IMG/VR virus record: IMGVR_UViG_3300033388_007730
Coordinates: 124,001 to 188,000 of that record
Strand: one strand, 5' to 3'
Length of the DNA: 64,000 nucleotides
This document shows, piece after piece, positions 4,487 to 45,185 of the stretch. Position numbers and translations under genes: made by a program. How positions within the stretch are numbered: position 1 is the stretch's first letter; every line of letters begins with the position of its first letter. A model generated the notes under the pieces. That model was given only the letters and a program-made list of their open reading frames with translations. It did not search any database and had not been told where the DNA came from.

Positions 4487-4495
4487 GGAGATCGT

Positions 4496-5197: not shown

Positions 5198-5198
5198 T

Positions 5199-5822: not shown

Positions 5823-5836
5823 TTAAGGAACAAAAT

Positions 5837-6826
5837 ATGTTATCAAAAGAGTTTTTGAAAAATTTTGAAGGAAAAAAGTGCTTGGTAACTGGTGGAACTG
5901 GTCTTATAGGAAGACAAGTTGTTGAAATGCTTTGTGATGCAGGAGCAAGAGTCACAATTATATCTTTGGATAAGGGTATAGAAGTAGATGAAAGAGCGAT
6001 ATATTTATATGCGGATCTAACTGATTTCGATTCTTGTAAAAAGATGACGATTGATAAGGAATATGTTTTCCATATTGCGGGAATAAAAGGATCAGTGAAA
6101 GTAACTAAAGAGAAACCAGCAAGTTTCTTTGTACCTCTTCTTATGATGAATACCAATATATTAGAAGCTTGTCGCCTGAATAACGTAGAGAAGGTTGTCT
6201 ATACAAGTTCTGTTGGGGCATACTCAAGTGCAGAAGTGTTTAAGGAAGACGAGAACTTAACAGGTGAACCTATGGATATGTTCCCTGGTTGGGCTAAGAG
6301 GATGGCTGAGAAGCAAATAGAAGCATATGCTATTCAATATGGCATGAAGAATATTGCAATCGTAAGACCTGCTAATATTTATGGACCTGGGGATAACTTC
6401 GATCCTGAAAATGCTATGGTTATTCCTACTTTGATGCATAGGATATATAATAATGAAGACCCTGTTGTGATATGGGGAGATGGTTCTGCTATTAGGGACT
6501 TTGCATATAGTAGAGATGTGGCTGAGGGCATCGTACAGGCTCTGTATTATGGCACAGATGGCAAGTTTGTTAATCTTGGTAGTGGAACAGGTGTTTCTAT
6601 TAAAGAGCTTGTAGAAGCTCTGAGCAGTTTTCTCAATTTTAATTATGAGTTTGACACTACGAAACCACCTGGTTTTCCAAGAAGAGTAATGGATATTTCT
6701 CTTGCTAAAGAGATGATATGTTATGAACCTTCTACGTCTTTGGAGGATGGATTGAGGAAAACCTGGGAATGGTTTGTTGAAAATGTCGAAGAATATAAGA
6801 GTAGAAAAAATTATTTTACGGAATAA
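5837..6826 (+). CDS. NAD-dependent epimerase/reductase (GDP-L-fucose synthase-like)
   Basis: TGGTGLIG, GWAKR, RPANIYGPGDNF, WGDGSAIRDF. Confidence 0.85.
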   Translation: MLSKEFLKNFEGKKCLVTGGTGLIGRQVVEMLCDAGARVTIISLDKGIEVDERAIYLYADLTDFDSCKKMTIDKEYVFHIAGIKGSVKVTKEKPASFFVPLLMMNTNILEACRLNNVEKVVYTSSVGAYSSAEVFKEDENLTGEPMDMFPGWAKRMAEKQIEAYAIQYGMKNIAIVRPANIYGPGDNFDPENAMVIPTLMHRIYNNEDPVVIWGDGSAIRDFAYSRDVAEGIVQALYYGTDGKFVNLGSGTGVSIKELVEALSSFLNFNYEFDTTKPPGFPRRVMDISLAKEMICYEPSTSLEDGLRKTWEWFVENVEEYKSRKNYFTE

Positions 6827-6828
6827 TT

Positions 6829-8199
6829 ATGGATGTATTGTTTGTAATTCATAAAATAGAGTATGGTGATCTAATAGCTTTAAGTTATTTGTCATCTATA
6901 GCTAAAGTGAGGGGATTTAAAACACATTTATGTATTTTAAATACAAATAACATATTCGAAATGATGGATACAATATCTCCTTGTGTTGTGGCTTATTCTG
7001 CTAATATAGAGAATTTTGCTATTTTAGTTGATGCTAACAAAAGCATTAAAGATAAGTATGATTTTACATCTATAATGGGTGGTCCTCAACCAACTTTTAA
7101 ACCAGATTTATTTCAAGAAAGCTCTGTTGATGTATTTTGTGTAGGTGAAGGAGAGTTGGTTTTTGGTGATTTTCTAGACGCTTTGAAAAATAATTTGCCA
7201 TTTGATAATATAGACAATTTAATTACTAAAAATGGAGCTAATCCCGTCAGGCATTTGATTAAAAATTTGGATGATTTGCCTTTTCCTGATAGAGATCTGA
7301 CTTTGAGTAACTCTTATTTGAAGGAAGTTTCAAAAAAGTCATTCTATACTACCAGAGGATGTCCATTTACATGCTCTTATTGTTGCAATAGTTATTATAA
7401 AAAATTATATAAGGGTAAGGGTAAAGCAATAAGAAGATTTTCTGTTGATAGAATTATAAGTGAAATGAAATTTGTTAAAGATAGATATAGAATGGATTTT
7501 ATAAAAATTGGCGATGATTTATTTACTTCAAAGGCAGACGATTGGCTTAAAGAATTTGCAGAAAGGTATTCTAGAGAGATAAACTTACCTTTTAATTGTT
7601 ATTTAAGATTAGATATGATAGATGATGATTTGCTAATTTTATTGAAGAAGGCAGGATGTTATTCTGTTCATCTTTCTGTAGACAGTGTTTCCAAAAAAGT
7701 AAGAGAAGAAGTTTTCAATAGGAAGTGGAGAGAAGTTAATATAGAAGAAAATTTGAAGATGATTCATAGTTATGGGATTAATACTTGGGTTAATTTTATG
7801 CTGTCTGCTCCGGAGTCTACTTTAAATGATGATTTAGAATCTATTAGATTGAGTAGGAGGACAGGAATAACATATACTGCTTATAGCACAACTATTCCAA
7901 TACAAAATACTAAATTATTTGATTACTGCGTTGATACAGGATGTATTGATGAAAAATATAATGGTGAGATAGGAGATAGTTGGGGGGTCTCGCCTTTAAA
8001 TTGTTTTTCAGAAAAAGAAAAAGATATAAGATACAATATTTTTTGTTTGGGTGCTATTGCTGCCAAGATGCCCATACCTATTTATAAATTTTTATTATTT
8101 ATTATAAAACACTTTCCGTCAAATCGTTTGTTCAAAAAAATTCATGATAGATATCTAAAATATTCGATAAAAAATAATATATTTAAAATAGAGAGATAG
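6829..8199 (+). CDS. B12-binding radical SAM protein
   Basis: GGPQPT and GEGE cobalamin-domain motifs, LPFPDR, RGCPFTCSYC (CxxxCxxC). Confidence 0.9.
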   Translation: MDVLFVIHKIEYGDLIALSYLSSIAKVRGFKTHLCILNTNNIFEMMDTISPCVVAYSANIENFAILVDANKSIKDKYDFTSIMGGPQPTFKPDLFQESSVDVFCVGEGELVFGDFLDALKNNLPFDNIDNLITKNGANPVRHLIKNLDDLPFPDRDLTLSNSYLKEVSKKSFYTTRGCPFTCSYCCNSYYKKLYKGKGKAIRRFSVDRIISEMKFVKDRYRMDFIKIGDDLFTSKADDWLKEFAERYSREINLPFNCYLRLDMIDDDLLILLKKAGCYSVHLSVDSVSKKVREEVFNRKWREVNIEENLKMIHSYGINTWVNFMLSAPESTLNDDLESIRLSRRTGITYTAYSTTIPIQNTKLFDYCVDTGCIDEKYNGEIGDSWGVSPLNCFSEKEKDIRYNIFCLGAIAAKMPIPIYKFLLFIIKHFPSNRLFKKIHDRYLKYSIKNNIFKIER

Positions 8200-8203
8200 A
8201 AAA

Positions 8204-8737
8204 ATGCAGGTAGAAACAACAAAGTTGAAAAATGTTCTTTTATTCATCCACGAATGTTATGAAGATCACAGGGGAACTTACGAAGAGATTTATAACCAAG
8301 AAAAATTTGACAAAATATGTGAAGAGTATATTGGTCATATAATTGAATTTAAAGAAGATAATATAGCAGTATCCTCTAAACATGTGCTTAGAGGGTTGCA
8401 TGGAGACAATAGGACTTGGAAATATGTTACTTGTTTGAAAGGTAAATATTTTATTAATGTGTTGTGTTATGATTATGACTCTGAATTTTTTGGACAATAC
8501 CAGAGTTTTGTTTTAAGTGAACAGAATAAAAGTCAACTTCTTATTCCTCCTTTTCATGGTCATGGATATGTTGTTATGAGTGATGAGGCAATTTTCCATT
8601 ACAAACAATCTTGTATATATAAAGGTATGAAAGAGCAATTCACAATAAAGTATAATGATGATAGGTTTAACATGTGGTGGCCTATAAAAAATCCTATTTT
8701 ATCAAAAAGAGACGAGACAGGGATGCTAATAGTATAA
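8204..8737 (+). CDS. rmlC: dTDP-4-dehydrorhamnose 3,5-epimerase-family cupin
   Basis: DHRG, VLRGLH, IPPFHGHG, WPIKNPILSKRD. Confidence 0.88.
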   Translation: MQVETTKLKNVLLFIHECYEDHRGTYEEIYNQEKFDKICEEYIGHIIEFKEDNIAVSSKHVLRGLHGDNRTWKYVTCLKGKYFINVLCYDYDSEFFGQYQSFVLSEQNKSQLLIPPFHGHGYVVMSDEAIFHYKQSCIYKGMKEQFTIKYNDDRFNMWWPIKNPILSKRDETGMLIV

Positions 8738-8765
8738 AAGATATTTTTTAATAAGGAGTTATTTT

Positions 8766-9689
8766 ATGAGTTTGTTAAATTTTACAGTTTTCCATGTTGG
8801 GGGCAGGGGGGGGATAGGTGAAGCTAATAGGGTTTTACAGCTTTCCAGAAATAAAAAAAATAAATTTAAGTTGTATGTTTTTGAAGCCGATCTTAATGAC
8901 GAATCATCAGATGAAGAAAATAAAAAATTTATAAGGAAGGTGAAAAAAAGGAATGATGTTGATGCGGAAGTTTTAGAGTATTGTATACATGATCATAATG
9001 GAGAGGAAGATTTCTATATTAATGTAGATCCAAGATCAAGTAGTCTATTTAAGATGTCTCCTGGTATAGTCAATTATAGTTTTCCTAAAATGGGAGAGCC
9101 TATGTGGAAAAATCATGGTGCGGTTGATGAGATTAAAAAAGTTAAAGTAAGTACTTTTGATTCTATTCGAGAGAATGGTCTAGATGTCGTTCCAGATCTT
9201 CTAAGTATGGACGCTCAAGGATCGGAACTATCTATTATGAAAGGTAGTAGTCATATATTTGATAATGATTGCTTGGCGGTTTGCACTGAGGTAGAGTTTA
9301 GGGAGATTTATAAAAAACAACCATTATTTTCTGATCAAGATTCTTTTTTAAGAAAAAATGGTTTTATATTTGCTAATTTCCATACTGTTCAGGAGTGGTT
9401 CCCTTCAAAGTTGATGATAGGAAAGCCCTTTTACACAGTCGGAGAGGTAACGTTTTTGAAAGATTATGTATATCTAATGGATAAATATAAAAATGATTTA
9501 GAAACGTTGATACCATTAATGTTTAAATTGGCAGTAATATCGAAAGCTTTATTTTACACTTCTTATACTTTTATTGTATTAGATTCTTTGTATGAGATGA
9601 ATACGAAGGCATATAAATTGTTTGTTAAAAATAGTTCTGATAAAATAGTAATTGATGTAGATAAATTTTATAAGGAGAATTTAAAATAA
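8766..9689 (+). CDS. FkbM-family methyltransferase
   Basis: HVGGRGG, FEAD, MDAQGSEL, EVEFREIYKKQPLFSDQD. Confidence 0.8.
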   Translation: MSLLNFTVFHVGGRGGIGEANRVLQLSRNKKNKFKLYVFEADLNDESSDEENKKFIRKVKKRNDVDAEVLEYCIHDHNGEEDFYINVDPRSSSLFKMSPGIVNYSFPKMGEPMWKNHGAVDEIKKVKVSTFDSIRENGLDVVPDLLSMDAQGSELSIMKGSSHIFDNDCLAVCTEVEFREIYKKQPLFSDQDSFLRKNGFIFANFHTVQEWFPSKLMIGKPFYTVGEVTFLKDYVYLMDKYKNDLETLIPLMFKLAVISKALFYTSYTFIVLDSLYEMNTKAYKLFVKNSSDKIVIDVDKFYKENLK

Positions 9690-10660
9690 TGAGTTTTTAT
9701 AAAGATAAAAATGTTTTAGTTACAGGAGCAGCAGGTTTTACTGGAACTAACTTAATTAAAAGATTATTAGAAGAAGGTGCAAATGTTAGAGGAGTATTAC
9801 ACAGAAAAAGTCCACGAGTTGATTTTGATTATGATAGGATAAATTATATATGGGCAGATCTAACACATAAAGATGCTTGTGCAGAAGTTGTAAAAGATAT
9901 TGATTATGTTTTTATGTGTGCTGCTAATACCTCCGGTGCTGCTGTGATGGAAAAAACACCTTTAACTCATGTAACTCCCAATGTAATAATGAATTCTCTT
10001 ATGCTTGAAGCTGCTAATAAGGCTGGAGTAAAGAAATTTTTATTCATGAGTAGCACAACAGTTTATCCAATTTCTGAAGAGTCTTTAAAAGAGGATGATG
10101 TTAATGATGAATTTTTTGAGAAGTATTATTGTGTTGGATGGATGAAAAGATTCTCTGAAGTCATGTGTGAGATGTATTCAACGAAGATTAAAGAACCTAT
10201 GACGACAATTGTTGTAAGACCAGGTAATCTTTATGGTGATTTTGATGATTATGAGTGGGACACTTCTCATTCTACAGCGGCGTTAATAAGAAGAGTAGTA
10301 GAGAGGCATGATCCATTAGTTGTATGGGGAGATGGAAGTGATTTAAAGGATATCACATATATATCTGATTTAATTGATGGTATGATGTCTGCCATGGAAA
10401 AAATTGATAACTTTGAAATTATTAATATAGCTAGCGGAAAGTCGTATAGTATTAAAGAAACTTTAAATATGATTTTAGAAATTGATGGATATATAGATGC
10501 AAAAGTTGAATATGATTTAACTAAACCAACTATGATCTCAAAAAGATTGATAGATATAAGTAAAGCACAAAAATTATTAAATTTTGAACCTAAGCACGAT
10601 CTTAGGTTAGGAATAGAAAAAACTATTAAATATTATAAGGAGAAAGATAATAATGGTTAA
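9689..10660 (+). CDS. NAD-dependent epimerase/reductase (GDP-L-fucose synthase-like), second copy
   Basis: TGAAGFTG, GWMKR, RPGNLYG, WGDGSD. Confidence 0.85.
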   Translation: MSFYKDKNVLVTGAAGFTGTNLIKRLLEEGANVRGVLHRKSPRVDFDYDRINYIWADLTHKDACAEVVKDIDYVFMCAANTSGAAVMEKTPLTHVTPNVIMNSLMLEAANKAGVKKFLFMSSTTVYPISEESLKEDDVNDEFFEKYYCVGWMKRFSEVMCEMYSTKIKEPMTTIVVRPGNLYGDFDDYEWDTSHSTAALIRRVVERHDPLVVWGDGSDLKDITYISDLIDGMMSAMEKIDNFEIINIASGKSYSIKETLNMILEIDGYIDAKVEYDLTKPTMISKRLIDISKAQKLLNFEPKHDLRLGIEKTIKYYKEKDNNG

Positions 10661-11354
10661 GTTTAGCATTATAGGACCAGCTATAAAATCTCATTTATAC
10701 TCTCGTTTCTACCAGGGGCTAAATAAAAATAACACCAATTTTGAAGTTGTGTTTGTGGGAAATAAACCACTTACAGAATCAATGCCAGATAATTTTATTT
10801 ACATATATTCAGAAAGTTCTCCTGCGTGTTGTCTTGAAATAGCAGCTAGAAAAGCTCAAGGAGAGTATTTGATGATATCTCCTGATGATTATACTTTTTC
10901 AAATAATTTTTTAGATAATTTTAAAAAATATTTAGATTCATGTAGTGATGAAAAGATGATGATTGCAGGAAAATATAAAAGAGGAGGAGATATGAAGGAC
11001 GAATGGCTGGTTTTTGATCAGAAGATTAAAGGATCATCTCCGATAGGTCAATGCACAACATTAAAAAGAGAAGAATGGTTAAAGTTGGGTGGAATAGACA
11101 GAAGGTTTGAACATGGGTGTTGTGATATGGATATGATTATGAGGATGTATGAAATTGGTTATAAACTTCATATAGAGAAGAATACGTGGGTAGAAGAGGA
11201 TGTTATTAAGGATAAAAAAATAAGGAGAAAACGTCTGTGGAAAAAAACGGGCAAAGCCAGAAGAGCATTATTGAATTCTTTGTGGGTTAAGAATGGCAAA
11301 ATGTCCAAAAAAAGACTGGGCAAATTATATCCTTTTTCAGAAGATATAGTATGA
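10653..11354 (+). CDS. Glycosyltransferase family 2-like
   Basis: AQGEYLMISPDD, LGGIDRRF, CDMD. Confidence 0.7.
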   Translation: MVKFSIIGPAIKSHLYSRFYQGLNKNNTNFEVVFVGNKPLTESMPDNFIYIYSESSPACCLEIAARKAQGEYLMISPDDYTFSNNFLDNFKKYLDSCSDEKMMIAGKYKRGGDMKDEWLVFDQKIKGSSPIGQCTTLKREEWLKLGGIDRRFEHGCCDMDMIMRMYEIGYKLHIEKNTWVEEDVIKDKKIRRKRLWKKTGKARRALLNSLWVKNGKMSKKRLGKLYPFSEDIV

Positions 11355-11421
11355 AAAAAATATACTGGGATATGCTTAATAAAAAAATTGAATAATTTTT
11401 AAGAAAATAAAAGGAGACAAG

Positions 11422-11865
11422 ATGAGTAGACAATGGCAATATAATTTTTCAGAATTAATAGATAGATTAAGCATTCATCAGTTAAAAGAAGTATTTATTC
11501 CGGAGCAAAAAGAAAAATATTCTAATGATATGGATCTGATTGCTAGTGATTTAACTGAAATTGTGAAAGAAAAAAATATAGAGTTATCAGGTGAGATGAT
11601 AAGAGCTATAATTGTCATAGCTCAAATGAATACTCATATTTGGTATAATGAATCTAAAGCTAGGAGTGGAGAAGATCAAGATGTCAATTTGTTGAAGCTT
11701 ACACATGGAATAAATGGAATTAGAAATAGAGTAGGAAATTGCATATTAGAGATGATTGGTGACATTGATAAATTTGATTGGAAGACAGACTGTTTAGCAG
11801 CTGAGTTTAAGGATTGGGAAATAAGTTTATTTAAGAAAAATAAGGAGAATAAAGATGAAGAATAA
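11422..11865 (+). CDS. Hypothetical helical protein
   Basis: Good RBS (AGGAG); ELIDRLSI motif of small proteins seen in sugar clusters. Confidence 0.6.
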   Translation: MSRQWQYNFSELIDRLSIHQLKEVFIPEQKEKYSNDMDLIASDLTEIVKEKNIELSGEMIRAIIVIAQMNTHIWYNESKARSGEDQDVNLLKLTHGINGIRNRVGNCILEMIGDIDKFDWKTDCLAAEFKDWEISLFKKNKENKDEE

Positions 11866-12823
11866 AAAATATAGTTGTTTTATTGGAAGATGGCAACCAT
11901 TTCACAAGGGACATGATTATATCATAAAACAGGCATTGAATAAAGGTAAATCAGTATGGATAGCCGTTAGAGACACTCCGGTAACAGACTGGGACCCTTA
12001 TACCACACAAGAGCGTTTTGAAATGATAAGTGCTCATTATAAGAATGAAGATGTGATTGTTAGTATTGTTCCTGATATTGAATCGGTTAATATAGGAAGA
12101 AAAGTTGGTTATGAAGTTAACCGTTATGATGCTCCAGAAGATATAGAGGGTGTTTCTGCTACTCAGATTAGAAAAATGATGTCAGAAGGAGATTCTTCGT
12201 GGAAAGAAAAAGTTCCTAAACTCATTGCTGATTATTTAATAAGTAAAGGTAATTTGTCTCTTGCAACAGAGCAAGGAATGGTTATATGGTTCACAGGTTT
12301 ATCAGGAGCAGGAAAGAGCACAGTAGCAAATGCTCTTCTACCTGTATTAGGAAATAAGGGTAGAGGAGTCAAAATACTTGATGGAGATGAGGTAAGAAGA
12401 AACATAACATCTGATTTAGGATTTTCAAAAGAAGATCGTTCAGAGAATATAAAGAGAATTAGTTTTGTAGCTAAATCAATTGCTGATGTAGGTGGGATAG
12501 CTATTGTAGCAGCTATATCTCCATATGAAGAAGACAGAGAAAAAGCTAGATATTTAATTGGAGAGGATAGATTTTTTGAAGTTCATGCTGATTGTCACAT
12601 GGATATTTTGGTAGAAAGAGATGTCAAAGGATTATACAAAAAAGCTATTGCTGGAGAGATTCTTAATTTTACTGGTATTTCAGATCCATATGAAGCTCCT
12701 AAAAATCCTAATTGTACAGTCCATAGCGACTATATGTCTGTTTCTGAATCTGTTAACAAAATATTAAAAAAGGTAGAAGAGTTTCTAAATAAACCAAAAG
12801 AAGGAATGATGTTTTATATATAA
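11855..12823 (+). CDS. cysC: HxGH nucleotidyltransferase fused to adenylylsulfate (APS) kinase
   Basis: N-terminal GRWQPFHKGH and SATQIR; C-terminal WFTGLSGAGKST, LDGDEVR, RDVKGLY, FTGISDPYEAP. Confidence 0.9.
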   Translation: MKNKKYSCFIGRWQPFHKGHDYIIKQALNKGKSVWIAVRDTPVTDWDPYTTQERFEMISAHYKNEDVIVSIVPDIESVNIGRKVGYEVNRYDAPEDIEGVSATQIRKMMSEGDSSWKEKVPKLIADYLISKGNLSLATEQGMVIWFTGLSGAGKSTVANALLPVLGNKGRGVKILDGDEVRRNITSDLGFSKEDRSENIKRISFVAKSIADVGGIAIVAAISPYEEDREKARYLIGEDRFFEVHADCHMDILVERDVKGLYKKAIAGEILNFTGISDPYEAPKNPNCTVHSDYMSVSESVNKILKKVEEFLNKPKEGMMFYI

Positions 12824-12833
12824 TAGAGATTAG

Positions 12834-13655
12834 ATGCATTTCAATAGAAAAAAAACACCGCAAAAGAAGAGACTTAAGATACGCCCTAATACTATTGATA
12901 AGAGAAGTCCTACTGATGATGTGAAGCATATACCAAGAGTCAGAAACTCTAGAGTAAAAAAGAAGAAGTCTATTTCACATGATGTAATAATATCAAAGAG
13001 TATTAATAATAGCAAATATAAGAATATGTCGGAGTGGAAGGGCATTGTTGAAAATCAACCAGCATTTATTCTTGGTAATGCTCCTAGCATATTATCCAGA
13101 AATTTACATTTGTTGAATGATTATTTTACTATAGGTGTGAATAGAATTTTTTATATTTATGATCCAACAATTTTAATTTGGCAAGATCAAGAAGTATGGA
13201 TTAAAGATAAGAAAAAAATAATGAAACAAAAATCTATAAAGGTTTGTAGAGATAGAAGTGATCCTAGACAAAAATTTATAAATTTTGAATTGAATATGGG
13301 AAAATTTAAGTTTAATAGTAATCCTGGCAAGTTGCATGGAAGAGGAAATACAGGAGTTTTAGCAATACAGTTGGCAGTTTCTATGGGGTGCTCTTGTGTA
13401 GTTTTATTGGGGATGGATTGCCGATATGAAGGAAGAAGTAGAACTGATTTTTATGGGAAGAATAAAGATCATAAACATTATACATTAAAAATGTGCAAAA
13501 ATGCGATGAATTGGGTAGAAGGAAAATGTCCTGTTCCAATATATAATTGTGGTAATTCTGATGCATGGCCTAGAAGAGAGTTGGAAGATGTCATTGAAGA
13601 ATTAAATCCTCTAAAATTAGGAAGAAATTATTATTTGAGTGTGTTGGGAAAATGA
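12834..13655 (+). CDS. DUF115/MptE/Maf-like protein
   Basis: AFILGNAPS, TIGVNR, AIQLAVSMG, LLGMDC. Confidence 0.65.
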   Translation: MHFNRKKTPQKKRLKIRPNTIDKRSPTDDVKHIPRVRNSRVKKKKSISHDVIISKSINNSKYKNMSEWKGIVENQPAFILGNAPSILSRNLHLLNDYFTIGVNRIFYIYDPTILIWQDQEVWIKDKKKIMKQKSIKVCRDRSDPRQKFINFELNMGKFKFNSNPGKLHGRGNTGVLAIQLAVSMGCSCVVLLGMDCRYEGRSRTDFYGKNKDHKHYTLKMCKNAMNWVEGKCPVPIYNCGNSDAWPRRELEDVIEELNPLKLGRNYYLSVLGK

Positions 13656-16564: not shown

Positions 16565-16573
16565 TATTAACTA

Positions 16574-16901: not shown

Positions 16902-16939
16902 TCTAATTTAAGAGGGGGCATAGATTTTTCAATAAAAAT

Positions 16940-16969: not shown

Positions 16970-17012
16970 GTTAATAGAAAATAAATTTTGTTAACACATC
17001 GGAGATATTATT

Positions 17013-35589: not shown

Positions 35590-36459
35590 ATGTATCAAGC
35601 TGCGTTAGGTGGATATGATTTAGTATTTACTGATGCCCCTGTTTATTACGAACCAGGATTTACTATTATGTATCCTTTGGAGTTAGAAGTTCCTCAGTGT
35701 GACATATATTACATTCTTATAAGAAAAAGAAGTGATAGTGGTGGAGTAATATTTGACACTTTATCTATTTCCAATATGAGTATAAGTGTTAAAGATGCTA
35801 CTAACGGAGAAGATATACCTGCTTATTTGACAGCAACTTTGACTAATACTTTTTGGGATGATGATCCAGCTTTTACTCCAATAGTTTTGGTAGTGGAGAA
35901 TAATCTCAGTGTTGGTAATGCCACAACAAGAGTAGTATCTTTAGATATATCTATATCAGATAATAATGATAATACTTTTATAAATTTAAGAACATCTATT
36001 GTAGATACTGGGAGGTTCTTTTATTTTATCCCTCTATCTACTAATGAGCTGAGCGGTAGAAATAAAAATACTGCTGTTGGCACACAATATTATTTATCGG
36101 TTGGAGCTAGTGGCGATAGATATTTATTATTCTCCCCTTATTCTTTTTTTAGTGAAGTTGAGAAAGGAAGCGATGGTATATCTTTCTCTTATCCAGTGGG
36201 ATCTATTTTTTATAAAAGACAAAAATCTTACAATGATGAGGATTTTGATTTTAGTATATTATCTTCTAGTCATGCATTTGTGCCAGATAACATTTCTTTA
36301 ATTAATATTCCAGGTTATAGAAAGGTTGCAGCTTTGCACGTAGATGCTAATATGCACAGTGAGTTATCTCATATCACAACAAATGCTTTTGTTGATATAG
36401 AATCAGTTGGTACTTTAAGCGGTGTGACTGACACTTTTAGAGTTAATCTTACAAGGTAA
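35590..36459 (+). CDS. Hypothetical beta-rich protein, possibly structural
   Basis: 289-aa S/T/D/aromatic-rich ORF. Confidence 0.55.
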   Translation: MYQAALGGYDLVFTDAPVYYEPGFTIMYPLELEVPQCDIYYILIRKRSDSGGVIFDTLSISNMSISVKDATNGEDIPAYLTATLTNTFWDDDPAFTPIVLVVENNLSVGNATTRVVSLDISISDNNDNTFINLRTSIVDTGRFFYFIPLSTNELSGRNKNTAVGTQYYLSVGASGDRYLLFSPYSFFSEVEKGSDGISFSYPVGSIFYKRQKSYNDEDFDFSILSSSHAFVPDNISLINIPGYRKVAALHVDANMHSELSHITTNAFVDIESVGTLSGVTDTFRVNLTR

Positions 36460-36468: not shown

Positions 36469-36987
36469 ATGAATTGGTTTAAAGAGTCAAGTAATAATGA
36501 TTTCATAGTTAAAATTAAAAAAATTCTCAAAGCACATCCGTTTACTAAGGCTTTAACAGAATATTACAATATTTCACCATCTGATATAGATAGTCATTTA
36601 GAGATAGAGATAGCAGATTTAGATGGAAAATATGCTGAGGGGAATGGTAGGATTATAAGGTTAAATAAAAAAATGATAAATGAAGATTTTTTCACTGGTA
36701 ATTTCCATTTTGTGATACATGAATTTTTTCATTGGCTAAAACGTAGATCTGAAGATAAGTTCTATTTTAATGATCCAGAAGAGATTCAAAGTTTCGTTCT
36801 TCAAATGGCGTGGGAAATTGTGTCTGGTAGAAGTGCTGAAGAAGTTAAGTGTAAGATGCATCCAGTTATAAAAAGTCATTTTAAGAATAATGAACAAAAA
36901 TTTAATATGGTTTTTAAGGAGATGTTAGAAAAAGCCATATATTTGGCTAACATTTATGAGAAAGAAAAGAATTTTTCAATGATATAA
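36469..36987 (+). CDS. Putative zinc metallopeptidase (HExxH), MNWFK N-terminus
   Basis: VIHEFFHWL with downstream PEEIQS. Confidence 0.6.
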   Translation: MNWFKESSNNDFIVKIKKILKAHPFTKALTEYYNISPSDIDSHLEIEIADLDGKYAEGNGRIIRLNKKMINEDFFTGNFHFVIHEFFHWLKRRSEDKFYFNDPEEIQSFVLQMAWEIVSGRSAEEVKCKMHPVIKSHFKNNEQKFNMVFKEMLEKAIYLANIYEKEKNFSMI

Positions 36988-37012: not shown

Positions 37013-37714
37013 ATGAAGCGATTGAAGGTTACTCATTTCCGATCAGATCCTGCTTATTGTGTGGCAGGAGCTTGTTCGGTTGTTGCCAACTATTATAATC
37101 CCGAAATAGATTATAATTTTGTAAAAAAAGAAGCATATAAAGTATCAAAAGATATAGCAGAAATAGGATTAGATAGTGGTCAAATGGGGTTACTTCTTAA
37201 TAGATTAGGATTTTATAAGGTTACTTTAGTTTCTAGTGTTATGCATTGTTTCGATTATTCTTGGCGAAATTATGGGAAAAAAAGACTGTTAAGAGAACTA
37301 GAAACTGCGACAAAAAAGAAAAAAGACGCAGGAGCAAGAGCAGAAATAAGAAGTATTTATAAATGGTACAAACAAAGTGATTTTGATAACAATATTATAA
37401 TAAGTTATGATTTTGGCAAGTATATAAGGCAATATCTTAATAAAGGAAAACCACTTATTCTCACTTTTAATTGGACTATGTTTTTTAAATTTGAAAAACA
37501 GAACAGCAAAGAAGAAGAAGATCCTATTAATGGTAATTATGAAGAACATGCCGTGGTAGCTAATGGTTATGATGATAAAGGAGTCTGGATAGTAGATTCT
37601 CATCATCAATATTATAAGTACAAAAGAAAAAAGTATAGAAGAGGATTCTATAAAATTTCTTGGGAAAATTTAATGACAATAATGGGAGAAGGAGATCTCA
37701 TTTTGCCAGAATAA
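37013..37714 (+). CDS. Papain-fold (C39-like) cysteine peptidase
   Basis: AYCVAGAC, GKPLIL, HAVVANGYDDKGVWIVDS. Confidence 0.75.
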   Translation: MKRLKVTHFRSDPAYCVAGACSVVANYYNPEIDYNFVKKEAYKVSKDIAEIGLDSGQMGLLLNRLGFYKVTLVSSVMHCFDYSWRNYGKKRLLRELETATKKKKDAGARAEIRSIYKWYKQSDFDNNIIISYDFGKYIRQYLNKGKPLILTFNWTMFFKFEKQNSKEEEDPINGNYEEHAVVANGYDDKGVWIVDSHHQYYKYKRKKYRRGFYKISWENLMTIMGEGDLILPE

Positions 37715-37735: not shown

Positions 37736-39403
37736 ATGGTAGATCAATTTACAAATATAGTAGGCGGATTTGAACAGTGTGAGCCACCTTTTTGTTCGCA
37801 AGATTTTCAAGTAGATGTTACGCAATTTGAGTGTAGTGGTGATATAGTTTATGTGAGCTGGATAATTACAGATCAATACAACAGAGGTATATCACCATCT
37901 TCAAATGTTGTTCAATATTCTTTGAATAGTAAAAATTTTAATAGTTCTCAACAAGTTGCTGTTAATAGTTTTAGTGGTAATTACTATAGTACTTATTTTG
38001 ATAAACCAGGAGAAGGATTGCTTTATATAAAAATAAAAGCACAAATAAATTTTATTTTTATAGAAGGTTATCCTGAAAACCATATTCCTCTAAATATGGA
38101 TACATGTGTAGATATAGCATCCGTAGCTGTGCCAGTTGGATTTTGTTCACAAACTCCATATGATGGTGTCCCTGTGTATATGGTAAAAAATATTTTGCCA
38201 ACGATAACTGACGACCCTGCTACTACATTTTATTTTGCAAGAGGAAATTATTGTTGGTTTGTAGATAAAAATCTTTATGATACTGAAATATCAATTGATG
38301 ATATTGATTATCCTAATTTGGCTGTTCTATGGGATGCTACAACTTCTATAGAAATTAAAAATAGTTGTGAAGCGTGTGATTTAACACTATCATGTCCATC
38401 ACCAGTTTGGACACCTGATCCTCTGTATCCCGGTGATTCTGGAAAAGATCAAGCAGAAATTTATTTGGAGTATAGCACTTGGACTGAGCGTGATGAAGTT
38501 ATAATTTATGGACCAGATCCACTTGGAGATTGTAGTAGAAATCAAATATGGAATTCTACTTGTGTAGGAACATGCAGAGGATATCAAGACTCTAGACAAG
38601 ATGATTGTGGTAATCCTGCTATTGATTGTGAAGATGGAGGAGAAGGACCAGGATTGTATTTAAGAAGACCGTCTCAATTTATAGTAACTGGATGTGATGG
38701 TTTTCACGACTATTATAATGGCACAGATTTTTGTGTAAAACAACTTTGTATTACTTTAAGAAAAGAGCAGATACCTATATCTGTACAAGTTATAGGAAAA
38801 TGCGATGACGCTAGTAGAACATATTGGTGTGCGTATGTAGAAGGACCTGATTTTACATATTGTAGATGTGGTAACGGAACTGATTGCGGAGCTATCATAG
38901 GTAGTTCTAGTAGTTCTAAGAGTTCAAGCTCAAGTTCTAAGAGTTCAAGCTCAAGTTCTTCTAAGAGTAGCTCAAGTTCTTCTAAGATTAGCTCATCAAG
39001 TAGTTCTAAAAGCAGCAGTTCTAGCTCGAAAAGTTCTAGCAGCTCTAGCTCGAAAAGTTCTAGCAGTTCTAGTTCAAATAGTTCTAGCTCAAGCTCTTCT
39101 AAGAGTAGTTCTTCAAGTAGTTCAAAGAGTTCTAGTAGCTCATCAAAGAGTAGTTCTTCTAGCAGTTCAGAGAGTTCAAGCAGCGATGAATCAGGTTCTG
39201 CCGCTGCTTTTCTGATCAATGATATGACCAATAAAGAGATAGAAGATATAATTAGTAAATTTTATAATGATAATCCTGGGATATTTGATGGTAAAACTCT
39301 TAGCGAAAAAGAAGATATTATTTTAGAATTTGTTGGGTCAGGTGAGATGATAGCGGAGGTGGCTCTTAGAATAGCGATTCGTGAGGGCATAGAAATAGCA
39401 TAG
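37736..39403 (+). CDS. Cys-rich protein with a long poly-Ser tract (probable virion or surface protein)
   Basis: Many Cys in an acidic domain, then about 94 aa of S/K repeat. Confidence 0.7.
   Translation: MVDQFTNIVGGFEQCEPPFCSQDFQVDVTQFECSGDIVYVSWIITDQYNRGISPSSNVVQYSLNSKNFNSSQQVAVNSFSGNYYSTYFDKPGEGLLYIKIKAQINFIFIEGYPENHIPLNMDTCVDIASVAVPVGFCSQTPYDGVPVYMVKNILPTITDDPATTFYFARGNYCWFVDKNLYDTEISIDDIDYPNLAVLWDATTSIEIKNSCEACDLTLSCPSPVWTPDPLYPGDSGKDQAEIYLEYSTWTERDEVIIYGPDPLGDCSRNQIWNSTCVGTCRGYQDSRQDDCGNPAIDCEDGGEGPGLYLRRPSQFIVTGCDGFHDYYNGTDFCVKQLCITLRKEQIPISVQVIGKCDDASRTYWCAYVEGPDFTYCRCGNGTDCGAIIGSSSSSKSSSSSSKSSSSSSSKSSSSSSKISSSSSSKSSSSSSKSSSSSSSKSSSSSSSNSSSSSSSKSSSSSSSKSSSSSSKSSSSSSSESSSSDESGSAAAFLINDMTNKEIEDIISKFYNDNPGIFDGKTLSEKEDIILEFVGSGEMIAEVALRIAIREGIEIA
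38903..39184 (+). repeat. Coding poly-Ser (SSSSSK)n low-complexity tract
   Basis: Mixed Ser codons AGT/TCT/TCA/AGC/TCG. Confidence 0.9.
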
Positions 39404-39407
39404 AAAT

Positions 39408-40220
39408 ATGAATTTTACAGATAAAGTGTATAAAAGATATAGTGATGCTAACGATATGGAAAGATATAGTGGGAAGATATATCTTAACTGTTGTGTTGGT
39501 GTTGAATATGATTTGGATTTATTAGAATACTCTATTAATTATTATAAAGAATTAGGAGTAGATGAATTTTTTATAATATTAAACACAGAAGATGAGAATA
39601 GTTTTAACCTCAAAAGAGCTATGAAAATATTAGACAAATATCCAGATATTCATAGGAGCATCTGGATAGGAGAGTATTATGGTTATATTAAAGGGGAAAA
39701 AGAGAAAAGTGTTGTTGAAAAAGTTATGGGAGAGGATGATTGGATAATTACTACTGATGTTGATGAATTTTTTGATTTTCCCATAGATTTAAGAAAATTA
39801 ATTGCCATTTGTGAAGATCAGGAGTGTCAAGTGGTTTATGGAAAAATAGTAGATAGGATTTCTTCAGATTATAAATTAAAAAAAGTAGATAAAACAAAAT
39901 CTCTGTGGGAACAATTCCCGATAAATGCTAAAATATATAACCAATTAAAAAGTAAAATATTATTACGCAGAAAAAAAATAGATATATATCATGGAGGTAA
40001 ATCTGGAGGACATCATTCATTTGTTGATCCAATGAGTGTTAAGATATATCCAGATATTTTAAAAGTGTATCATTTTCACTGGACAAATACTTTATTAGGG
40101 AAACTAGAAGAGAGAGTAGAAGTATGGAAAAAATATGGTAGGAATGATTGGAAGAGCCTTCAAGAAGTAATAGATGATTATAAAAAATATGGAATGTTAG
40201 TAGAGTCACAAAAATATTAA
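39408..40220 (+). CDS. Glycosyltransferase family 2-like (GT-A)
   Basis: YYKELGVDEF, WIITTDVDEF, VYHFHW. Confidence 0.75.
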   Translation: MNFTDKVYKRYSDANDMERYSGKIYLNCCVGVEYDLDLLEYSINYYKELGVDEFFIILNTEDENSFNLKRAMKILDKYPDIHRSIWIGEYYGYIKGEKEKSVVEKVMGEDDWIITTDVDEFFDFPIDLRKLIAICEDQECQVVYGKIVDRISSDYKLKKVDKTKSLWEQFPINAKIYNQLKSKILLRRKKIDIYHGGKSGGHHSFVDPMSVKIYPDILKVYHFHWTNTLLGKLEERVEVWKKYGRNDWKSLQEVIDDYKKYGMLVESQKY

Positions 40221-40277
40221 AGGTTATTAATTATTGATAATAGATATGATATTTTTTTTGTATTAAATTCAGGTTAT

Positions 40278-41009
40278 ATGGAGTTCGGCAAAATACTTTT
40301 AGGGTCTATTTTTGACAATTGCGATTTATCTAAAATAAATTGTATACATATTTCTGATACAGGATTAAAAGAATGCGATATAAGATATATTAAGAGTAAA
40401 TATAATAAAGTAAAGATTGTTAAAACTAATGTTATAACAGAATTTGAAACTGGAGGTAGATGGGGAGGAGATTGGCAGAAAAACATTAATAATAAAACAG
40501 AAGAATACTTAAAAGTTCTTGAATACAATATATACCCAGTAATTATGATTGATGCTGATTGTATGATTCTAAAGGATTTATATTGTTTAATAGATATTAA
40601 TTATGATATTCAATTATGTGTAAGGTATTCCGATAGCAGAAAAATTCCAAATTGTTTAGCATCATTTTTTATATGTAATAATGCTAAATCAGTAGAATTT
40701 ATAAAGAAATGGAGAAAAATTTATAAGCATTTAACATTAGCTTATAATAATAATCCTGTAGAAAGTAAATCTTTAGAAATTGCGAGAGATATATACTGTA
40801 AGAAGTATAAGTTTAAAAGTCATTGTGTCCAAGAAGTTGCTGGTGAACCGGATAATTATTTTGAAGATGAAGAATACCAAAAAAAAGTAAGTATTGTTCA
40901 TTTTAAGGCTAGAGGCGGATTTAATTCAGGACTAAAAAATAAGAGGATTATATTTGAGACGAGAACGAAACATTTTAGAGACGATATCCAAAAGTATTTA
41001 AAGGACTAA
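40278..41009 (+). CDS. Nucleotide-diphospho-sugar transferase (GT-A)
   Basis: SDTGL, VIMIDADC (DxD), ASFF, IVHFK. Confidence 0.7.
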   Translation: MEFGKILLGSIFDNCDLSKINCIHISDTGLKECDIRYIKSKYNKVKIVKTNVITEFETGGRWGGDWQKNINNKTEEYLKVLEYNIYPVIMIDADCMILKDLYCLIDINYDIQLCVRYSDSRKIPNCLASFFICNNAKSVEFIKKWRKIYKHLTLAYNNNPVESKSLEIARDIYCKKYKFKSHCVQEVAGEPDNYFEDEEYQKKVSIVHFKARGGFNSGLKNKRIIFETRTKHFRDDIQKYLKD

Positions 41010-41012: not shown

Positions 41013-41405
41013 ATGAATTTTAAAGATATAATAAAAAAATATAGAGACAGGAATAAAAGCACAATATCTTCTGACAATGTGTCTCATGAGATGAATGCCA
41101 TTGTGCTTTATTCAACGTCTAATGCTCTATTTGATTTTAATGGTGTTATGATTGATGATGTTATGTCTTATGGCAAATCTAAGGGATACAACATAGATAA
41201 AATTGTTTTTCTTACCTCATATGATATAGAATTTACTGATGAGAATAAAGGTGTTAAAAAAGTAGACGATAATTCAATTAGGATTAGTCAGAATTATAGG
41301 ATGAAAAGTGATGCCAAAATAAGTATTATAGAAGAAGATGGAAAAGTAATTGCCAGGGTTTTTATGGGATCTTATATTATTGTAGGTAAAATACGTGAAA
41401 AATAA
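41013..41405 (+). CDS. Hypothetical protein
   Basis: 130-aa ORF overlapping the kinase start. Confidence 0.55.
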   Translation: MNFKDIIKKYRDRNKSTISSDNVSHEMNAIVLYSTSNALFDFNGVMIDDVMSYGKSKGYNIDKIVFLTSYDIEFTDENKGVKKVDDNSIRISQNYRMKSDAKISIIEEDGKVIARVFMGSYIIVGKIREK

Positions 41406-42861
41406 AATATCAAAAAAACGGTGGTTTTCTGAGGTAGTTCTGTATAATATGCGGGAGTCTATAATAATTACGAATGTCGATGGAGTAATAATTTATGTGA
41501 ACAAAGCAACAGAAAAATTATTTGGTTATACTGAAAAAGAAATGATAAATCAGAAACCAATAATGGTTAATGCTGAACCTGATGCAGAGAAAATCCAGGA
41601 ATCTATTTTAGAGGCTATGCTATGTGATGGGGAATGGAAAGGGCAGTTGCTTAATAGGAAAAAAAATGGTGATTTATTCACAGTTGAATTAACAATATGT
41701 CTTCTAAAAGATCTATATGATAACTTAGTTGGTTTTATAGGATATCAAAAAGATGTGACAAAAGCACTTAAGGCATCCAAGAAGATAAAAGAGAGTGAAG
41801 AGAAGTTTAGAAAAATTTTTCAAAATTCTCCTATGGGTATGCACTTGTATCAATTAAACATGGATGATGAGTTAGTTTTAATAGACTCTAATCCTGCTGC
41901 TGATGATTTTACAGGTATTAACACTGTTGATTTTATCGGAAAAACTCTCGAAGAAGCTTTTCCAGTTTTAATCGGTACAGAGATTCATGAAAGATACAAA
42001 ATGGCAGCTTCTAAAGGTATCTCTTGGAATACATCTTCTTTTACATACAAAGATGAAAGAATAAATGGTATTTATGATATATGGGCATATCAAATTTCAC
42101 GTAATCGTGTATTAGTACAGTTTGTTGAAGTAGTTAAGAGAGAACACGTTGAAGAGGAATTAAGAAATAGAAATCAAGAGTTAGAACAATTCGCATATGT
42201 AGCTTCTCATGACCTACAAGAACCATTGAGAGTAGTATCTAATTATTGTGAGATGTTGAGTGATAAATGCAAAACTTGTCCAAGAAGAGATAAAGATACT
42301 GAAAAGTGGTTGGAATATATAACGGAAGCTATTGATAGAATGAAAAATTTAATAAGGGAGTTATTGGATTTTTCTAGGGTAGGAAGAAAAGATAAATCAT
42401 TTGAGAGTTGTAATATAGGAGACATAATAGAAGATGTTAAAGATGATTTCAAGATATTGATAAAAGAGACTGATGCTGTTATAAAAGTAGAAGAGAACAT
42501 GCCATCAATAAATTGTATCGAATTCAGAATTAGACAATTATTTTATAATTTGATAAGTAATGCTATAAAATTTAGGGGAAAGAAAAAACCGCATATAGAT
42601 ATAAGCTTTTATAAAGAAGATGACGAATATGTATTTTGTGTTAAAGATAATGGGATAGGAATTTCACCAAAATATTTTGATAGAATCTTTGGAATATTTA
42701 AGAGATTGTATTCTAGAGAAGAATATCCTGGTACAGGAATAGGTCTTGCTTTATGTAAGAAAATAGTAGAAACTCATAATGGCAGAATATGGGTTGATTC
42801 TAAAGAGAATAAAGGGGCTTCTTTTTATTTTACCCTTTCTACAGTATTAGAAAGTGATTAA
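41395..42861 (+). CDS. Cytoplasmic PAS-PAS sensor histidine kinase
   Basis: Two PAS domains; H box FAYVASHDLQEPLR; N box NLISNAIKF; G1 DNGIGI; G2 GTGIGLALC. Confidence 0.93.
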   Translation: MKNKISKKRWFSEVVLYNMRESIIITNVDGVIIYVNKATEKLFGYTEKEMINQKPIMVNAEPDAEKIQESILEAMLCDGEWKGQLLNRKKNGDLFTVELTICLLKDLYDNLVGFIGYQKDVTKALKASKKIKESEEKFRKIFQNSPMGMHLYQLNMDDELVLIDSNPAADDFTGINTVDFIGKTLEEAFPVLIGTEIHERYKMAASKGISWNTSSFTYKDERINGIYDIWAYQISRNRVLVQFVEVVKREHVEEELRNRNQELEQFAYVASHDLQEPLRVVSNYCEMLSDKCKTCPRRDKDTEKWLEYITEAIDRMKNLIRELLDFSRVGRKDKSFESCNIGDIIEDVKDDFKILIKETDAVIKVEENMPSINCIEFRIRQLFYNLISNAIKFRGKKKPHIDISFYKEDDEYVFCVKDNGIGISPKYFDRIFGIFKRLYSREEYPGTGIGLALCKKIVETHNGRIWVDSKENKGASFYFTLSTVLESD

Positions 42862-45142: not shown

Positions 45143-45185
45143 AATATCCCCCAACATTCATTGTGATATTGGGGGATATTTTTTT
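45143..45185. terminator. Probable bidirectional terminator between convergent genes
   Basis: AATATCCCCCAA / TTGGGGGATATT stem followed by a T-tract. Confidence 0.75.

What the first reader, a model, noticed from the sequence alone, without database searches (positions are those of the whole stretch)
37736..41009. Poly-Ser Cys-rich protein directly followed by two glycosyltransferases: candidate virion O-glycosylation module
Seen: a ~94-aa Ser/Lys tract written with mixed Ser codons, which suggests selection on the protein rather than DNA slippage, in a Cys-rich protein with no evident signal peptide. Two GT-A genes follow and two peptidases precede it. Known: Ser-rich repeats are O-glycosylation substrates in bacterial SRR adhesins. 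Inference: a mucin-like phage protein glycosylated by neighbouring GTs, possibly with sugars from the 0.5-13.6 kb cluster.
Basis: inference. Interest (0 to 1): 0.6.

Follow-up and report, generated by a model that had tools for sequence, protein, structure and literature searches.

The report
Polyserine-linked modular protein beside swappable glycosyltransferases
A huge phage encodes a cysteine-rich, immunoglobulin-like protein whose head and tail domains are joined by a 94-residue polyserine spacer; related phages carry different sugar-adding enzymes beside this gene in about half of the cases, so sugar coating of the spacer is plausible but neither required nor shown.

Summary
ORF 37736-39403 (555 aa) has 22 Cys in residues 1-389, a 94-residue tract (81 Ser, 10 Lys) written with five Ser codons, and no hydrophobic segment. 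It is followed by two GT-A-type glycosyltransferases. It is preceded by a C39-like peptidase and a small HExxH protein.

The window lies in a 219-kb fragment of a huge phage. The protein belongs to an unannotated family with 78 cluster representatives. Each member has an N-terminal Cys-rich beta-sandwich module (first part fn3/Ig-like), an optional polyserine tract of 0 to about 185 residues, and a swappable C-terminal domain. Paralogues with the same C-terminal domain exist with and without the tract, so the tract is a linker. It is closest to bacterial polyserine linkers.

Glycosyltransferase linkage is real but facultative. Three unrelated GT sets flank the gene in six loci. They are absent in four of the eight loci where the whole interval is visible. 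The C39-like peptidase is the constant neighbour.

The phage also carries a roughly 40-kb island of soluble glycan enzymes, including NeuB and a Maf/sialyltransferase-like gene.

Verdict: this is a polyserine-linked modular, probably surface-exposed phage protein next to a variable glycan cassette. O-glycosylation of the tract is plausible (about 0.3) and untested.

The parts
37736..38902 (+). N-terminal Cys-rich module (residues 1-389) of the 555-aa protein. It has a short disordered N-terminus, a CxPPxC motif and three beta-rich subdomains.
   Evidence: The profile of 6 homologues finds 78 cluster representatives at E<=1e-3 and 58 at E<=1e-10, with no Pfam or PHROG match. AF2 with a 58-sequence alignment gives mean pLDDT 83. 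Residues 18-126 match fn3/Ig-like sandwiches at VIA Z 8-9. The rest gives only generic tandem-Ig matches.
38903..39184 (+). Polyserine tract (residues 390-483): 12 units of S5-7 plus Lys, Ile, Asn or Glu. It acts as an interdomain linker.
   Evidence: In homologues the tract is 0 to about 185 residues long, with interrupters K, Q, I, V, L, E, D, H or N.
39185..39400 (+). C-terminal 'type A' domain, about 60 helical residues. It is shared by many family members and by a differently built protein (L027).
   Evidence: Alignment A8 of 9 sequences. No Pfam match. The Atlas gives only trivial helical matches.
39408..40220 (+). Glycosyltransferase, GT-A fold, PF13704 Glyco_tranf_2_4, with a DVDE motif.
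   Evidence: E 1.4e-9. Homologues of 38-52% identity lie next to type-A-domain proteins in L026, L027 and L010.
40278..41009 (+). Second putative glycosyltransferase, PF03407 Nucleotid_trans (marginal), with a DAD motif.
   Evidence: E 1.5e-4, 22.3 bits against a cut-off of 22. A homologue lies in one open frame with two PF13704-like units in L028.
37013..37714 (+). C39-like cysteine peptidase. It is the constant upstream neighbour of the family.
   Evidence: PF13529 at E 6.5e-9. Cys16, His179 and Asp195 are invariant and mean column identity is 72% in 10 orthologues. It lies directly upstream, or with inserted genes between, in at least 10 loci.
36469..36987 (+). Conserved 172-aa protein with an invariant HEFFH motif; a possible small zincin.
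   Evidence: No family match. Alignment of 9 orthologues gives 77% mean column identity.
35590..36459 (+). Conserved 289-aa protein of unknown function, part of the conserved upstream block.
   Evidence: Orthologues of 284-297 aa at the same position in L003, L004, L005, L008, L011, L013 and L022. No Pfam match.
41013..41405 (+). Conserved 130-aa protein that lies between the variable slot and the histidine kinase in all relatives.
   Evidence: Orthologues of 119-130 aa before the kinase in L003, L008, L011, L026 and L048. Only sub-threshold Pfam matches.
41395..42861 (+). PAS histidine kinase that marks the far edge of the variable slot.
   Evidence: Syntenic PAS/HisKA/HATPase_c genes in L003, L004, L006, L008, L011, L026 and L048.
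495..13655 (+). Sugar-nucleotide cluster and possible sugar source: intein-bearing 4,6-dehydratase, TPP-dependent E1 pair, epimerases, B12/radical-SAM enzyme, FkbM methyltransferase, APS kinase-cytidylyltransferase, and a Maf/MptE-like transferase at 12834-13655.
   Evidence: PHROG 4603 'alpha-2,3-sialyltransferase' at E 3.8e-15 for 12834-13655. The cluster is continuous with the GT/NeuB island upstream of the window.

Best explanation
The 555-aa protein is a modular protein of a huge phage. It has no secretion signal and is probably surface-exposed, of the adhesin, decoration or fibre type.

A Cys-rich head made of beta-sandwich (fn3/Ig-like) subdomains is joined to a small helical C-terminal 'type A' domain by a polyserine linker. 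The linker acts as a long, flexible, hydrophilic spacer. Its length and unit sequence drift quickly through duplication of 7-8-codon units.

The gene occupies the first position of a hypervariable slot between a conserved C39-like peptidase and a conserved 130-aa protein plus histidine kinase. In different phages this slot also holds paralogues, a polyserine protein with beta-helix-like repeats, or cassettes of glycan enzymes.

The two GT-A genes here are one such accessory cassette. They plausibly add sugars to the Ser spacer of the adjacent protein, but the spacer exists and persists without them.

Shown: the architecture, the family, the optional nature of the tract, and the facultative, non-orthologous GT neighbourhood. 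Inferred: surface or virion location, spacer function, and glycosylation.
For: Family and modular build:
- 78 representatives.
- The N-module is conserved while the C-terminal domains swap between type A, type B and others.
- The type B domain of P0002 is 43% identical (E 4e-19) to the N-terminus of the neighbouring P0007. P0007 continues through its own polyserine tract into a region with beta-helix-like repeats.
- Tandem paralogues occur in L005, L011, L017 and L020.

Linker role:
- The same N-module and type A domain occur with 0 (P0018, P0026) to about 185 Ser-rich residues.
- In L010 and L027, Ser or Ser/Thr tracts lie between other domain pairs.
- The second polyserine protein of this genome, with (S6Q)n, lies between ORFs of 1941, 1957 and 2006 aa. 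Between them these carry fn3, Laminin_G_3 and Kelch matches.

Fold: pLDDT 83, with an fn3/Ig-like first subdomain.

GT cassette:
- Present in the window, L004, L008, L010, L026 and L027, from three unrelated family sets. Sulfo-transferases, methyl-transferases and radical-SAM genes accompany them.
- Absent in L003/L012, L006, L011 and L048/49.

Published polyserine linkers average 39-44 residues and 80-83% Ser and join domains of extracellular enzymes (PMC2699552).
Against: - There is no evidence of virion location. The locus sits among a CCA-adding-type enzyme, peptidases, a two-component system and ThyX, not among capsid or tail genes.
- The beta-helix reading of P0007 rests on reading its repeats. 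Pfam, PHROG and PDB sequence searches found nothing.
- Subdomains 2 and 3 of the head were not searched on their own.
- Most related contigs are short, so absence of a GT is shown only for the visible interval. Those phages may carry GTs elsewhere, as this one does.
- The related loci come from one phage lineage and are not independent samples.
Confidence: 0.6

Rival explanations
1. The polyserine tract is a dedicated mucin-like O-glycosylation substrate. The two adjacent GT-A enzymes initiate and extend glycans on it, using sugars from the phage's own nucleotide-sugar pathways. The result is a glycan-coated stalk on a virion protein.
For: - GTs of three unrelated family sets, with sulfo- or methyl-transferases, flank proteins that end in the type A domain in six loci. 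In five of them that protein shows a polySer tract; in L026 it is cut off. One is an 812-aa protein with a different N-terminal build. This kind of non-orthologous replacement is typical of glycan diversity islands.
- PF13704 homologues found from the GT side again lie beside such proteins.
- The genome has at least 10 GT2 genes, GT1/GT4 genes, NeuB and a Maf/sialyltransferase-like gene, and no multi-pass membrane protein in the island. This fits glycosylation of a soluble acceptor.
- Phage-encoded GTs are reported to glycosylate capsid proteins of mycobacteriophages Che8 and Rita (PMC11256854).
Against: - Four loci with polyserine members have no GT in the fully visible interval, and they include the closest relative.
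- The tract is optional within the family.
- GTs are common in this genome, so adjacency is less telling.
- There is no biochemical evidence of any kind.
Confidence: 0.3
2. The GTs are unrelated to the neighbouring protein. They belong to the phage's general glycan machinery, acting on another protein, a host envelope polymer, a small molecule or DNA. They lie here only because this slot accepts accessory genes.
For: - The slot between the peptidase and the 130-aa protein plus kinase holds very different contents in relatives.
- The GT-free arrangement peptidase, family gene, kinase occurs in L006 and, with the 120-aa gene before the kinase, in L048/49.
- There are more than 10 other GT genes in the genome.
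- Phage GT clusters that decorate DNA bases with diverse glycans are known (bioRxiv 10.1101/2023.12.21.572611).
Against: - GT cassettes recur specifically beside type-A-domain proteins, even when the search starts from the GT and even with a different protein architecture.
- The locus holds no cytosine methyltransferase or TET/JBP-type oxygenase of the kind that accompanies DNA-glycosylating GTs. The Tet_JBP search of the genome was empty, but its control was silent as well, so this is weak.
Confidence: 0.3
3. The protein is a substrate of the adjacent C39-like peptidase. A short N-terminal leader is removed after Gly11, in the manner of double-glycine leaders, and this couples processing to assembly or release.
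For: - The peptidase is the most constant neighbour and keeps its Cys/His/Asp triad.
- Residues 1-17 are disordered in the model.
- Gly11 with hydrophobic residues at -4 and -7 is kept in most members, and the close clade has Gly-Gly.
Against: - Gly-Gly is not conserved. Most members have Asp-Gly, Asn-Gly or His-Gly, and some have no Gly at all.
- The leader would be only 9-11 residues long.
- There is no fused ABC transporter.
- The peptidase is part of a strongly conserved core block, so adjacency may be positional only.
- The complex prediction could not be run.
Confidence: 0.1

Closest known systems
Bacterial polyserine linkers (PSLs) of Saccharophagus degradans, Teredinibacter turnerae and Cellvibrio carbohydrate-active enzymes (Howard et al. 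2004, as summarised in PMC2699552)
   Same: Runs of more than 80% Ser, tens of residues long, lying between independently folded domains of modular proteins. Length varies and function is unknown. Here the tract is 86% Ser, lies between two conserved domains and is optional in paralogues.
   Different: Here the tract is longer (94 residues, up to about 185 in relatives, against a mean of 39-44). It is periodic (S5-7 plus one residue). It sits in a phage protein with no signal peptide and no CAZy or CBM domain.
Serine-rich repeat (SRR) adhesins of Gram-positive bacteria with GtfA/GtfB and accessory Sec (own knowledge of the family)
   Same: A long Ser-rich region next to glycosyltransferase genes, with a variable set of extra GTs between strains.
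   Different: No signal peptide, cell-wall anchor, SecA2/SecY2 genes or GtfA/B-type GT-B enzymes are seen. The repeat is S5-7K rather than alternating Ser-X dipeptides. GT linkage is facultative.
Virion glycosylation by phage-encoded GTs in mycobacteriophages Che8 and Rita (Freeman et al. 2023, as cited in PMC11256854 and PMC12582341), and glycosylated fibrils or capsids of giant viruses (PMC9614988, title and abstract only)
   Same: A virus that carries its own GTs and sugar pathways and could glycosylate its own structural proteins in the cytoplasm.
   Different: In those systems the substrates are capsid or fibril proteins and the glycans were shown chemically. Here the candidate substrate is a non-capsid modular protein and nothing has been shown.
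T4 Hoc-type decoration proteins (own knowledge): Ig-like domains displayed from the capsid through a C-terminal binding domain
   Same: Beta-sandwich (fn3/Ig-like) N-terminal module followed by a small C-terminal domain that could serve as the anchor.
   Different: No sequence relation. The Cys-rich head, the polyserine spacer and any capsid binding of the type A domain are not tested.

Membership tests
Polyserine linker (PSL) proteins | Run of about 80% or more Ser, tens of residues long | tested here: met
   81 Ser of 94 residues (86%). Published PSLs are 80-83% Ser and 39-44 residues on average.
Polyserine linker (PSL) proteins | Lies between independently folding domains and is variable or dispensable | tested here: met
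   The N-module and the type A domain are conserved on either side. P0018 and P0026 lack the tract. Lengths range from 0 to about 185 residues.
Polyserine linker (PSL) proteins | Secreted carbohydrate-active enzyme context (signal peptide, GH/CE/PL/CBM domains) | tested here: not met
   No hydrophobic N-terminus and no CAZy-type Pfam domain.
SRR adhesin / accessory Sec glycoprotein system | Long N-terminal signal peptide and C-terminal cell-wall anchor | tested here: not met
   No hydrophobic segment anywhere in the protein. The C-terminus is a helical domain.
SRR adhesin / accessory Sec glycoprotein system | GtfA/GtfB-type initiating GTs and SecA2/SecY2 in the locus | tested here: not met
   The neighbouring GTs match GT-A families PF13704 and PF03407. 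No Sec genes were seen among the ORFs scanned around the locus.
SRR adhesin / accessory Sec glycoprotein system | Ser-rich region is O-glycosylated | not testable with these tools
   Needs mass spectrometry or lectin or periodate staining.
GT-A glycosyltransferases (the two downstream genes) | Match to a curated GT-A family above threshold, and a DxD-type motif | tested here: met
   PF13704 at 38.8 bits against 27.5; PF03407 at 22.3 bits against 22 (marginal). The DVDE and DAD motifs are kept in L028 homologues.
Double-glycine leader substrates of C39 peptidases | Gly-Gly (or GA/GS) at -2/-1 conserved across the family, and a leader of about 15 residues or more | tested here: not met
   Gly-Gly occurs only in the close clade. 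Elsewhere the pair is DG, NG or HG, or there is no Gly. The leader would be 9-11 residues.
Double-glycine leader substrates of C39 peptidases | Cognate C39 peptidase with a catalytic Cys/His/Asp triad | tested here: met
   PF13529 match; Cys16, His179 and Asp195 invariant. There is no ABC transporter fusion.
Phage virion glycoproteins (Che8/Rita type) | Substrate is a virion structural protein carrying covalent glycans added by phage GTs | not testable with these tools
   Virion location and glycans need particle proteomics. The only indirect hints are domain sharing with a protein that has beta-helix-like repeats and a second polyserine protein among giant ORFs that carry adhesin-type domains.

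The most novel reading that the evidence does not exclude
Huge phages of this lineage run a self-contained cytoplasmic protein O-glycosylation system. An Ig-like, Cys-rich surface protein carries a polyserine stalk that is coated with glycans. The composition of these glycans is diversified between phages by swapping cassettes of GTs, sulfo-, methyl- and radical-SAM enzymes at one genomic slot, fed by a roughly 40-kb glycan island with NeuB and a Maf-like transferase. This would be a phage counterpart of mucins and of the glycosylated fibrils of giant viruses.
Probability: 0.25. Interest if true: 0.8.

Novelty: new variant of a known kind. Interest (0 to 1): 0.5.

Why it matters
Polyserine linkers have so far been described mainly in secreted bacterial polysaccharide-degrading enzymes, and their function is still unknown. 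Finding them as a recurrent, fast-evolving joint in a modular protein family of huge phages extends that class. The same slot holds interchangeable glycan-enzyme cassettes, and the genome carries about 40 kb of soluble glycan enzymes.

This gives a concrete, testable candidate for protein glycosylation by a phage outside the mycobacteriophages. If the tract is glycosylated, these phages would display a variable glycan coat. That would bear on adsorption, on sticking to surfaces and on evasion of recognition. If it is not glycosylated, the family is still a clean natural system for asking what polyserine spacers do.

Tried and rejected
- Phage GenBank collection: tblastn of the protein found no match.
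- IMG/VR scan with the N-module profile found no relative other than the window's own record.
Whether GT-free loci have these GTs elsewhere is therefore unknown.
- The first AF2 model with 6 sequences was poor (pLDDT 64). Its Foldseek searches gave only weak Ig/fn3 and phage tail matches. It was superseded by the 58-sequence model.
- The ESM Atlas look-up of the C-terminal domain and of residues 127-389 gave only trivial helical or Ig-like resemblances from a poor Atlas model.
- PDB sequence searches of both GTs, the peptidase and P0007 found nothing usable.
- The Pfam SPX and SOG2 matches on the tract are low-complexity artefacts below threshold.
- Double-glycine leader idea: the Gly-Gly is not conserved.
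- DNA-glycosylation idea: the Tet_JBP search of the genome was empty, but so was its control set, so it carries no weight.
- The antisense 172-aa Leu/Glu-rich ORF (38713-39231, minus strand) is a mirror image of the Ser codons and not a gene.
- The read-mapping and sequencing-run tools were not used.
Full report
**Setting.** The window is bases 124001-188000 of a 219,188-bp IMG/VR virus record that CheckV rates as 44% complete. It is therefore a fragment of a huge phage. GC content is about 31%, GC skew is strong, and almost all genes lie on the + strand. The region holds replication genes, several inteins, a CCA-adding-type enzyme, a two-component system and ThyX.

**The observation.** ORF 37736-39403 encodes 555 aa.
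- Residues 390-483 are 81 Ser, 10 Lys and one each of Ile, Asn and Glu. They form 12 units of S5-7 plus one other residue.
- Five Ser codons are used: AGT 27, TCT 20, AGC 17, TCA 15 and TCG 2. AGC makes up 21% of them, against 8% in the genome's long ORFs.
- Given 7.2% Ser genome-wide, the tract is far beyond chance, at about 1e-77.
- Residues 1-389 hold 22 Cys where 6.5 are expected.
- No hydrophobic segment is present in this protein or its neighbours.
- Downstream genes match PF13704 (clear) and PF03407 (at threshold). Upstream genes are a PF13529 C39-like peptidase and a 172-aa protein with an HEFFH motif but no family match.
The tract DNA does contain tandem units of 21, 24 and 45 nt at 84-100% identity. 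Unit duplication, although not trinucleotide slippage, has therefore shaped it.

**The protein family.** A word search found five relatives of 34-75% identity. A profile of the N-terminal 389 residues then found 78 cluster representatives at E<=1e-3 among 1.84 billion. None has a Pfam or PHROG assignment. The sources are marine-sediment and other environmental metagenomes, and include contigs of 386 kb and 548 kb.

The alignments show three parts:
- A conserved N-module that starts with a CxPPxC motif and has many conserved Cys.
- A Ser-rich tract in about half of the full-length members. It is 0 to about 185 residues long. The interrupting residue differs from protein to protein: K, Q, I, V, L, E, D, H or N.
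- A C-terminal domain that swaps.

The window's C-terminal 'type A' domain is about 60 residues and helical. It recurs in at least nine proteins, including P0018 and P0026, which join it to the N-module with no polyserine at all. A 'type B' domain of about 100 residues ends P0002, P0003 and P0017. It also begins the neighbouring P0007 (43% identity, E 4e-19). P0007 then runs through its own polyserine tract into a region whose repeats read like a parallel beta-helix. That reading is my inference only; the searches were empty.

Ser or Ser/Thr tracts also join other domain pairs in L010 and L027. One 548-kb phage has three tandem paralogues, one with the tract and two without. The tract therefore behaves as an optional, fast-changing interdomain linker.

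**Fold.** With a 58-sequence alignment, AF2 gives a mean pLDDT of 83. Residues 1-17 are disordered. Residues 18-126 form an fn3/Ig-like sandwich (VIA Z 8-9 against many fn3 domains, a generic fold). The remainder is beta-rich and gives only generic tandem-Ig matches. Subdomains 2 and 3 were not searched alone, so I make no claim about them.

**A second polyserine protein.** The only other polyserine ORF in the 219-kb record is a 516-aa protein with (S6Q)n. It lies between ORFs of 1941, 1957 and 2006 aa. The second of these carries an fn3 match and the third Laminin_G_3 and Kelch matches; the first has only a marginal propeller-repeat match. This is an adhesin- or fibre-like neighbourhood. Together with the domain shared with P0007, this is the indirect basis for a surface or virion role. 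It is not proof.

**Neighbourhood.** The upstream block is conserved and much less divergent than the family gene. It runs CCA-type enzyme, 289-aa protein, HExxH protein, C39-like peptidase. The far side is a conserved 120-130-aa protein and a PAS histidine kinase. Between them lies a variable slot whose first occupant is always a family member.

| Locus | Content of the slot |
|---|---|
| Window | GT PF13704 and GT PF03407 |
| L004 | PF04488 GT, sulfotransferase, weak GT2, methyltransferase |
| L008 | Two PF11316 GTs placed before the family gene |
| L026 | PF13704 GT directly after a type A C-terminus; methyltransferase, GT29-like and GT2 genes after the kinase |
| L003/L012 | No GT: truncated paralogue, 119-aa gene, P0007 |
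| L006 | No GT: kinase follows directly |
| L011 | No GT: paralogues only |
| L048/49 | No GT: the minimal arrangement |

Two partly visible loci add cases. In L010 the family gene is followed by a radical-SAM/SPASM gene and then a PF13704 GT. In L027 an 812-aa protein is followed by radical-SAM-like, methyltransferase and PF13704 genes. That protein reads like two lectin-type domains, a polySer tract, a small Cys-rich domain, a second polySer tract and a type A domain; the two domain readings are mine and no family search confirmed them. In L028 two PF13704-like units and a PF03407-like unit lie in one open frame, which shows that the window's two GTs travel together.

GT linkage is thus recurrent and involves three unrelated GT sets, which argues for a functional tie. 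It is also facultative, being absent in half of the fully visible loci. All loci come from one phage lineage, so the count is not a statistical test. The pre-computed Pfam column missed the L010 GT, so '-' entries there are not reliable negatives.

**Glycan capacity of the phage.** Upstream of the window, at record positions of about 98-124 kb, lie at least 10 GT2 matches, several GT1/GT4 genes and a NeuB-type nonulosonic acid synthase. These run straight into the window's sugar-nucleotide cluster at 0.5-13.6 kb. That cluster ends with an MptE/Maf-like gene that matches PHROG 4603, 'alpha-2,3-sialyltransferase', at E 3.8e-15. By a simple hydropathy scan, none of these ORFs has more than one hydrophobic segment, and the 219-kb fragment has no ORF with more than three. 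This fits glycosylation of a soluble acceptor better than lipid-linked export. The test is crude and the genome is incomplete.

**Interpretation.** The best-supported reading is a polyserine-linked modular protein beside an accessory glycan cassette. The spacer role of the tract is well supported. Its glycosylation by the neighbouring GTs is plausible, at about 0.3, and is the most interesting open point.

Rivals:
- The GTs serve another target and merely share the variable slot.
- The constant neighbour, the C39-like peptidase, processes the protein. The Gly-Gly that suggested a double-glycine leader is not conserved, and the complex prediction could not be run.

**Comparison with known systems.**
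- The tract matches bacterial polyserine linkers in composition and position but not in context.
- It fails the defining features of SRR adhesins.
- Phage virion glycosylation has precedents in mycobacteriophages and in giant viruses. Membership in that kind cannot be tested without proteomics.

I rate this a new variant of a known kind, of moderate interest.

Noticed in passing
G000:C1 about 98,000-124,500 (loci L045, L046), continuous with window 495-13655: A roughly 40-kb island of glycan enzymes in a phage. It has at least 10 GT2 matches, GT1/GT4 genes, a fused GT4-GT2 protein of 645 aa, NeuB, NDP-sugar dehydratases and epimerases, a TPP-dependent E1 pair, a B12/radical-SAM enzyme, an FkbM methyltransferase and an APS kinase-cytidylyltransferase. 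A crude hydropathy scan finds no multi-pass membrane protein among them.
   Followed up: partly
window 12834-13655 (+): An MptE/Maf-like protein (PF01973, 34.1 bits, just under the cut-off of 34.6) that matches PHROG 4603 'alpha-2,3-sialyltransferase' at E 3.8e-15. Together with NeuB upstream, it suggests that the phage makes and transfers a nonulosonic acid.
   Followed up: partly
window 495-2504, 22942-25647 and 57196-59568 (+): Two genes are interrupted by inteins with LAGLIDADG domains: an NDP-sugar 4,6-dehydratase and the clamp-loader gamma/tau subunit. A third ORF, 790 aa with a papain-family peptidase domain, has a LAGLIDADG match but no intein-splicing match was found for it.
   Followed up: no
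window 41395-42861 (+), 45184-45597 (-) and 45608-46081 (-): A phage-encoded two-component set: a PAS histidine kinase and two single-domain response regulators on the opposite strand. It is syntenic in all longer relatives (L003, L004, L048).
   Followed up: no
window 32922-35588 (+): An 888-aa protein. Its orthologues match PolyA_pol/CCA-adding and HD domains and carry a long C-terminal extension. It heads the conserved block upstream of the family gene. No tRNA gene lies in the window.
   Followed up: no
window 38713-39231 (-): A 172-aa Leu/Glu-rich antisense ORF that mirrors the Ser codons of the tract. It is an artefact of the repeat and not a gene.
   Followed up: yes
G000:C1:34007-35557 (L007:12008-13558) and flanking ORFs L007:278-6103, 6108-11981 and 13570-19590: A second polyserine protein (516 aa, (S6Q)n) lies between three ORFs of about 2000 aa. 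One carries fn3 and another Laminin_G_3, Kelch and VWA matches. This is probably the phage's fibre or adhesin module.
   Followed up: partly
L010:2862-3938 and L027:2788-3444: Radical-SAM genes lie between the polyserine, type-A-domain protein and a PF13704 GT in two relatives. One has a SPASM domain (E 8e-5). They could tailor a sugar or modify the protein.
   Followed up: no
L004:4949-6145 (-): An IS605 OrfB/Cas12f-like TnpB gene is inserted in the conserved upstream block of a related phage contig.
   Followed up: no
window 41013-41405 (+) and L003:11827-12210: The conserved 127-130-aa protein before the kinase gives the same sub-threshold match to Peptidase_C47 (staphopain) in two orthologues (E about 0.01). 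This is too weak to use, but it is consistent between them.
   Followed up: no
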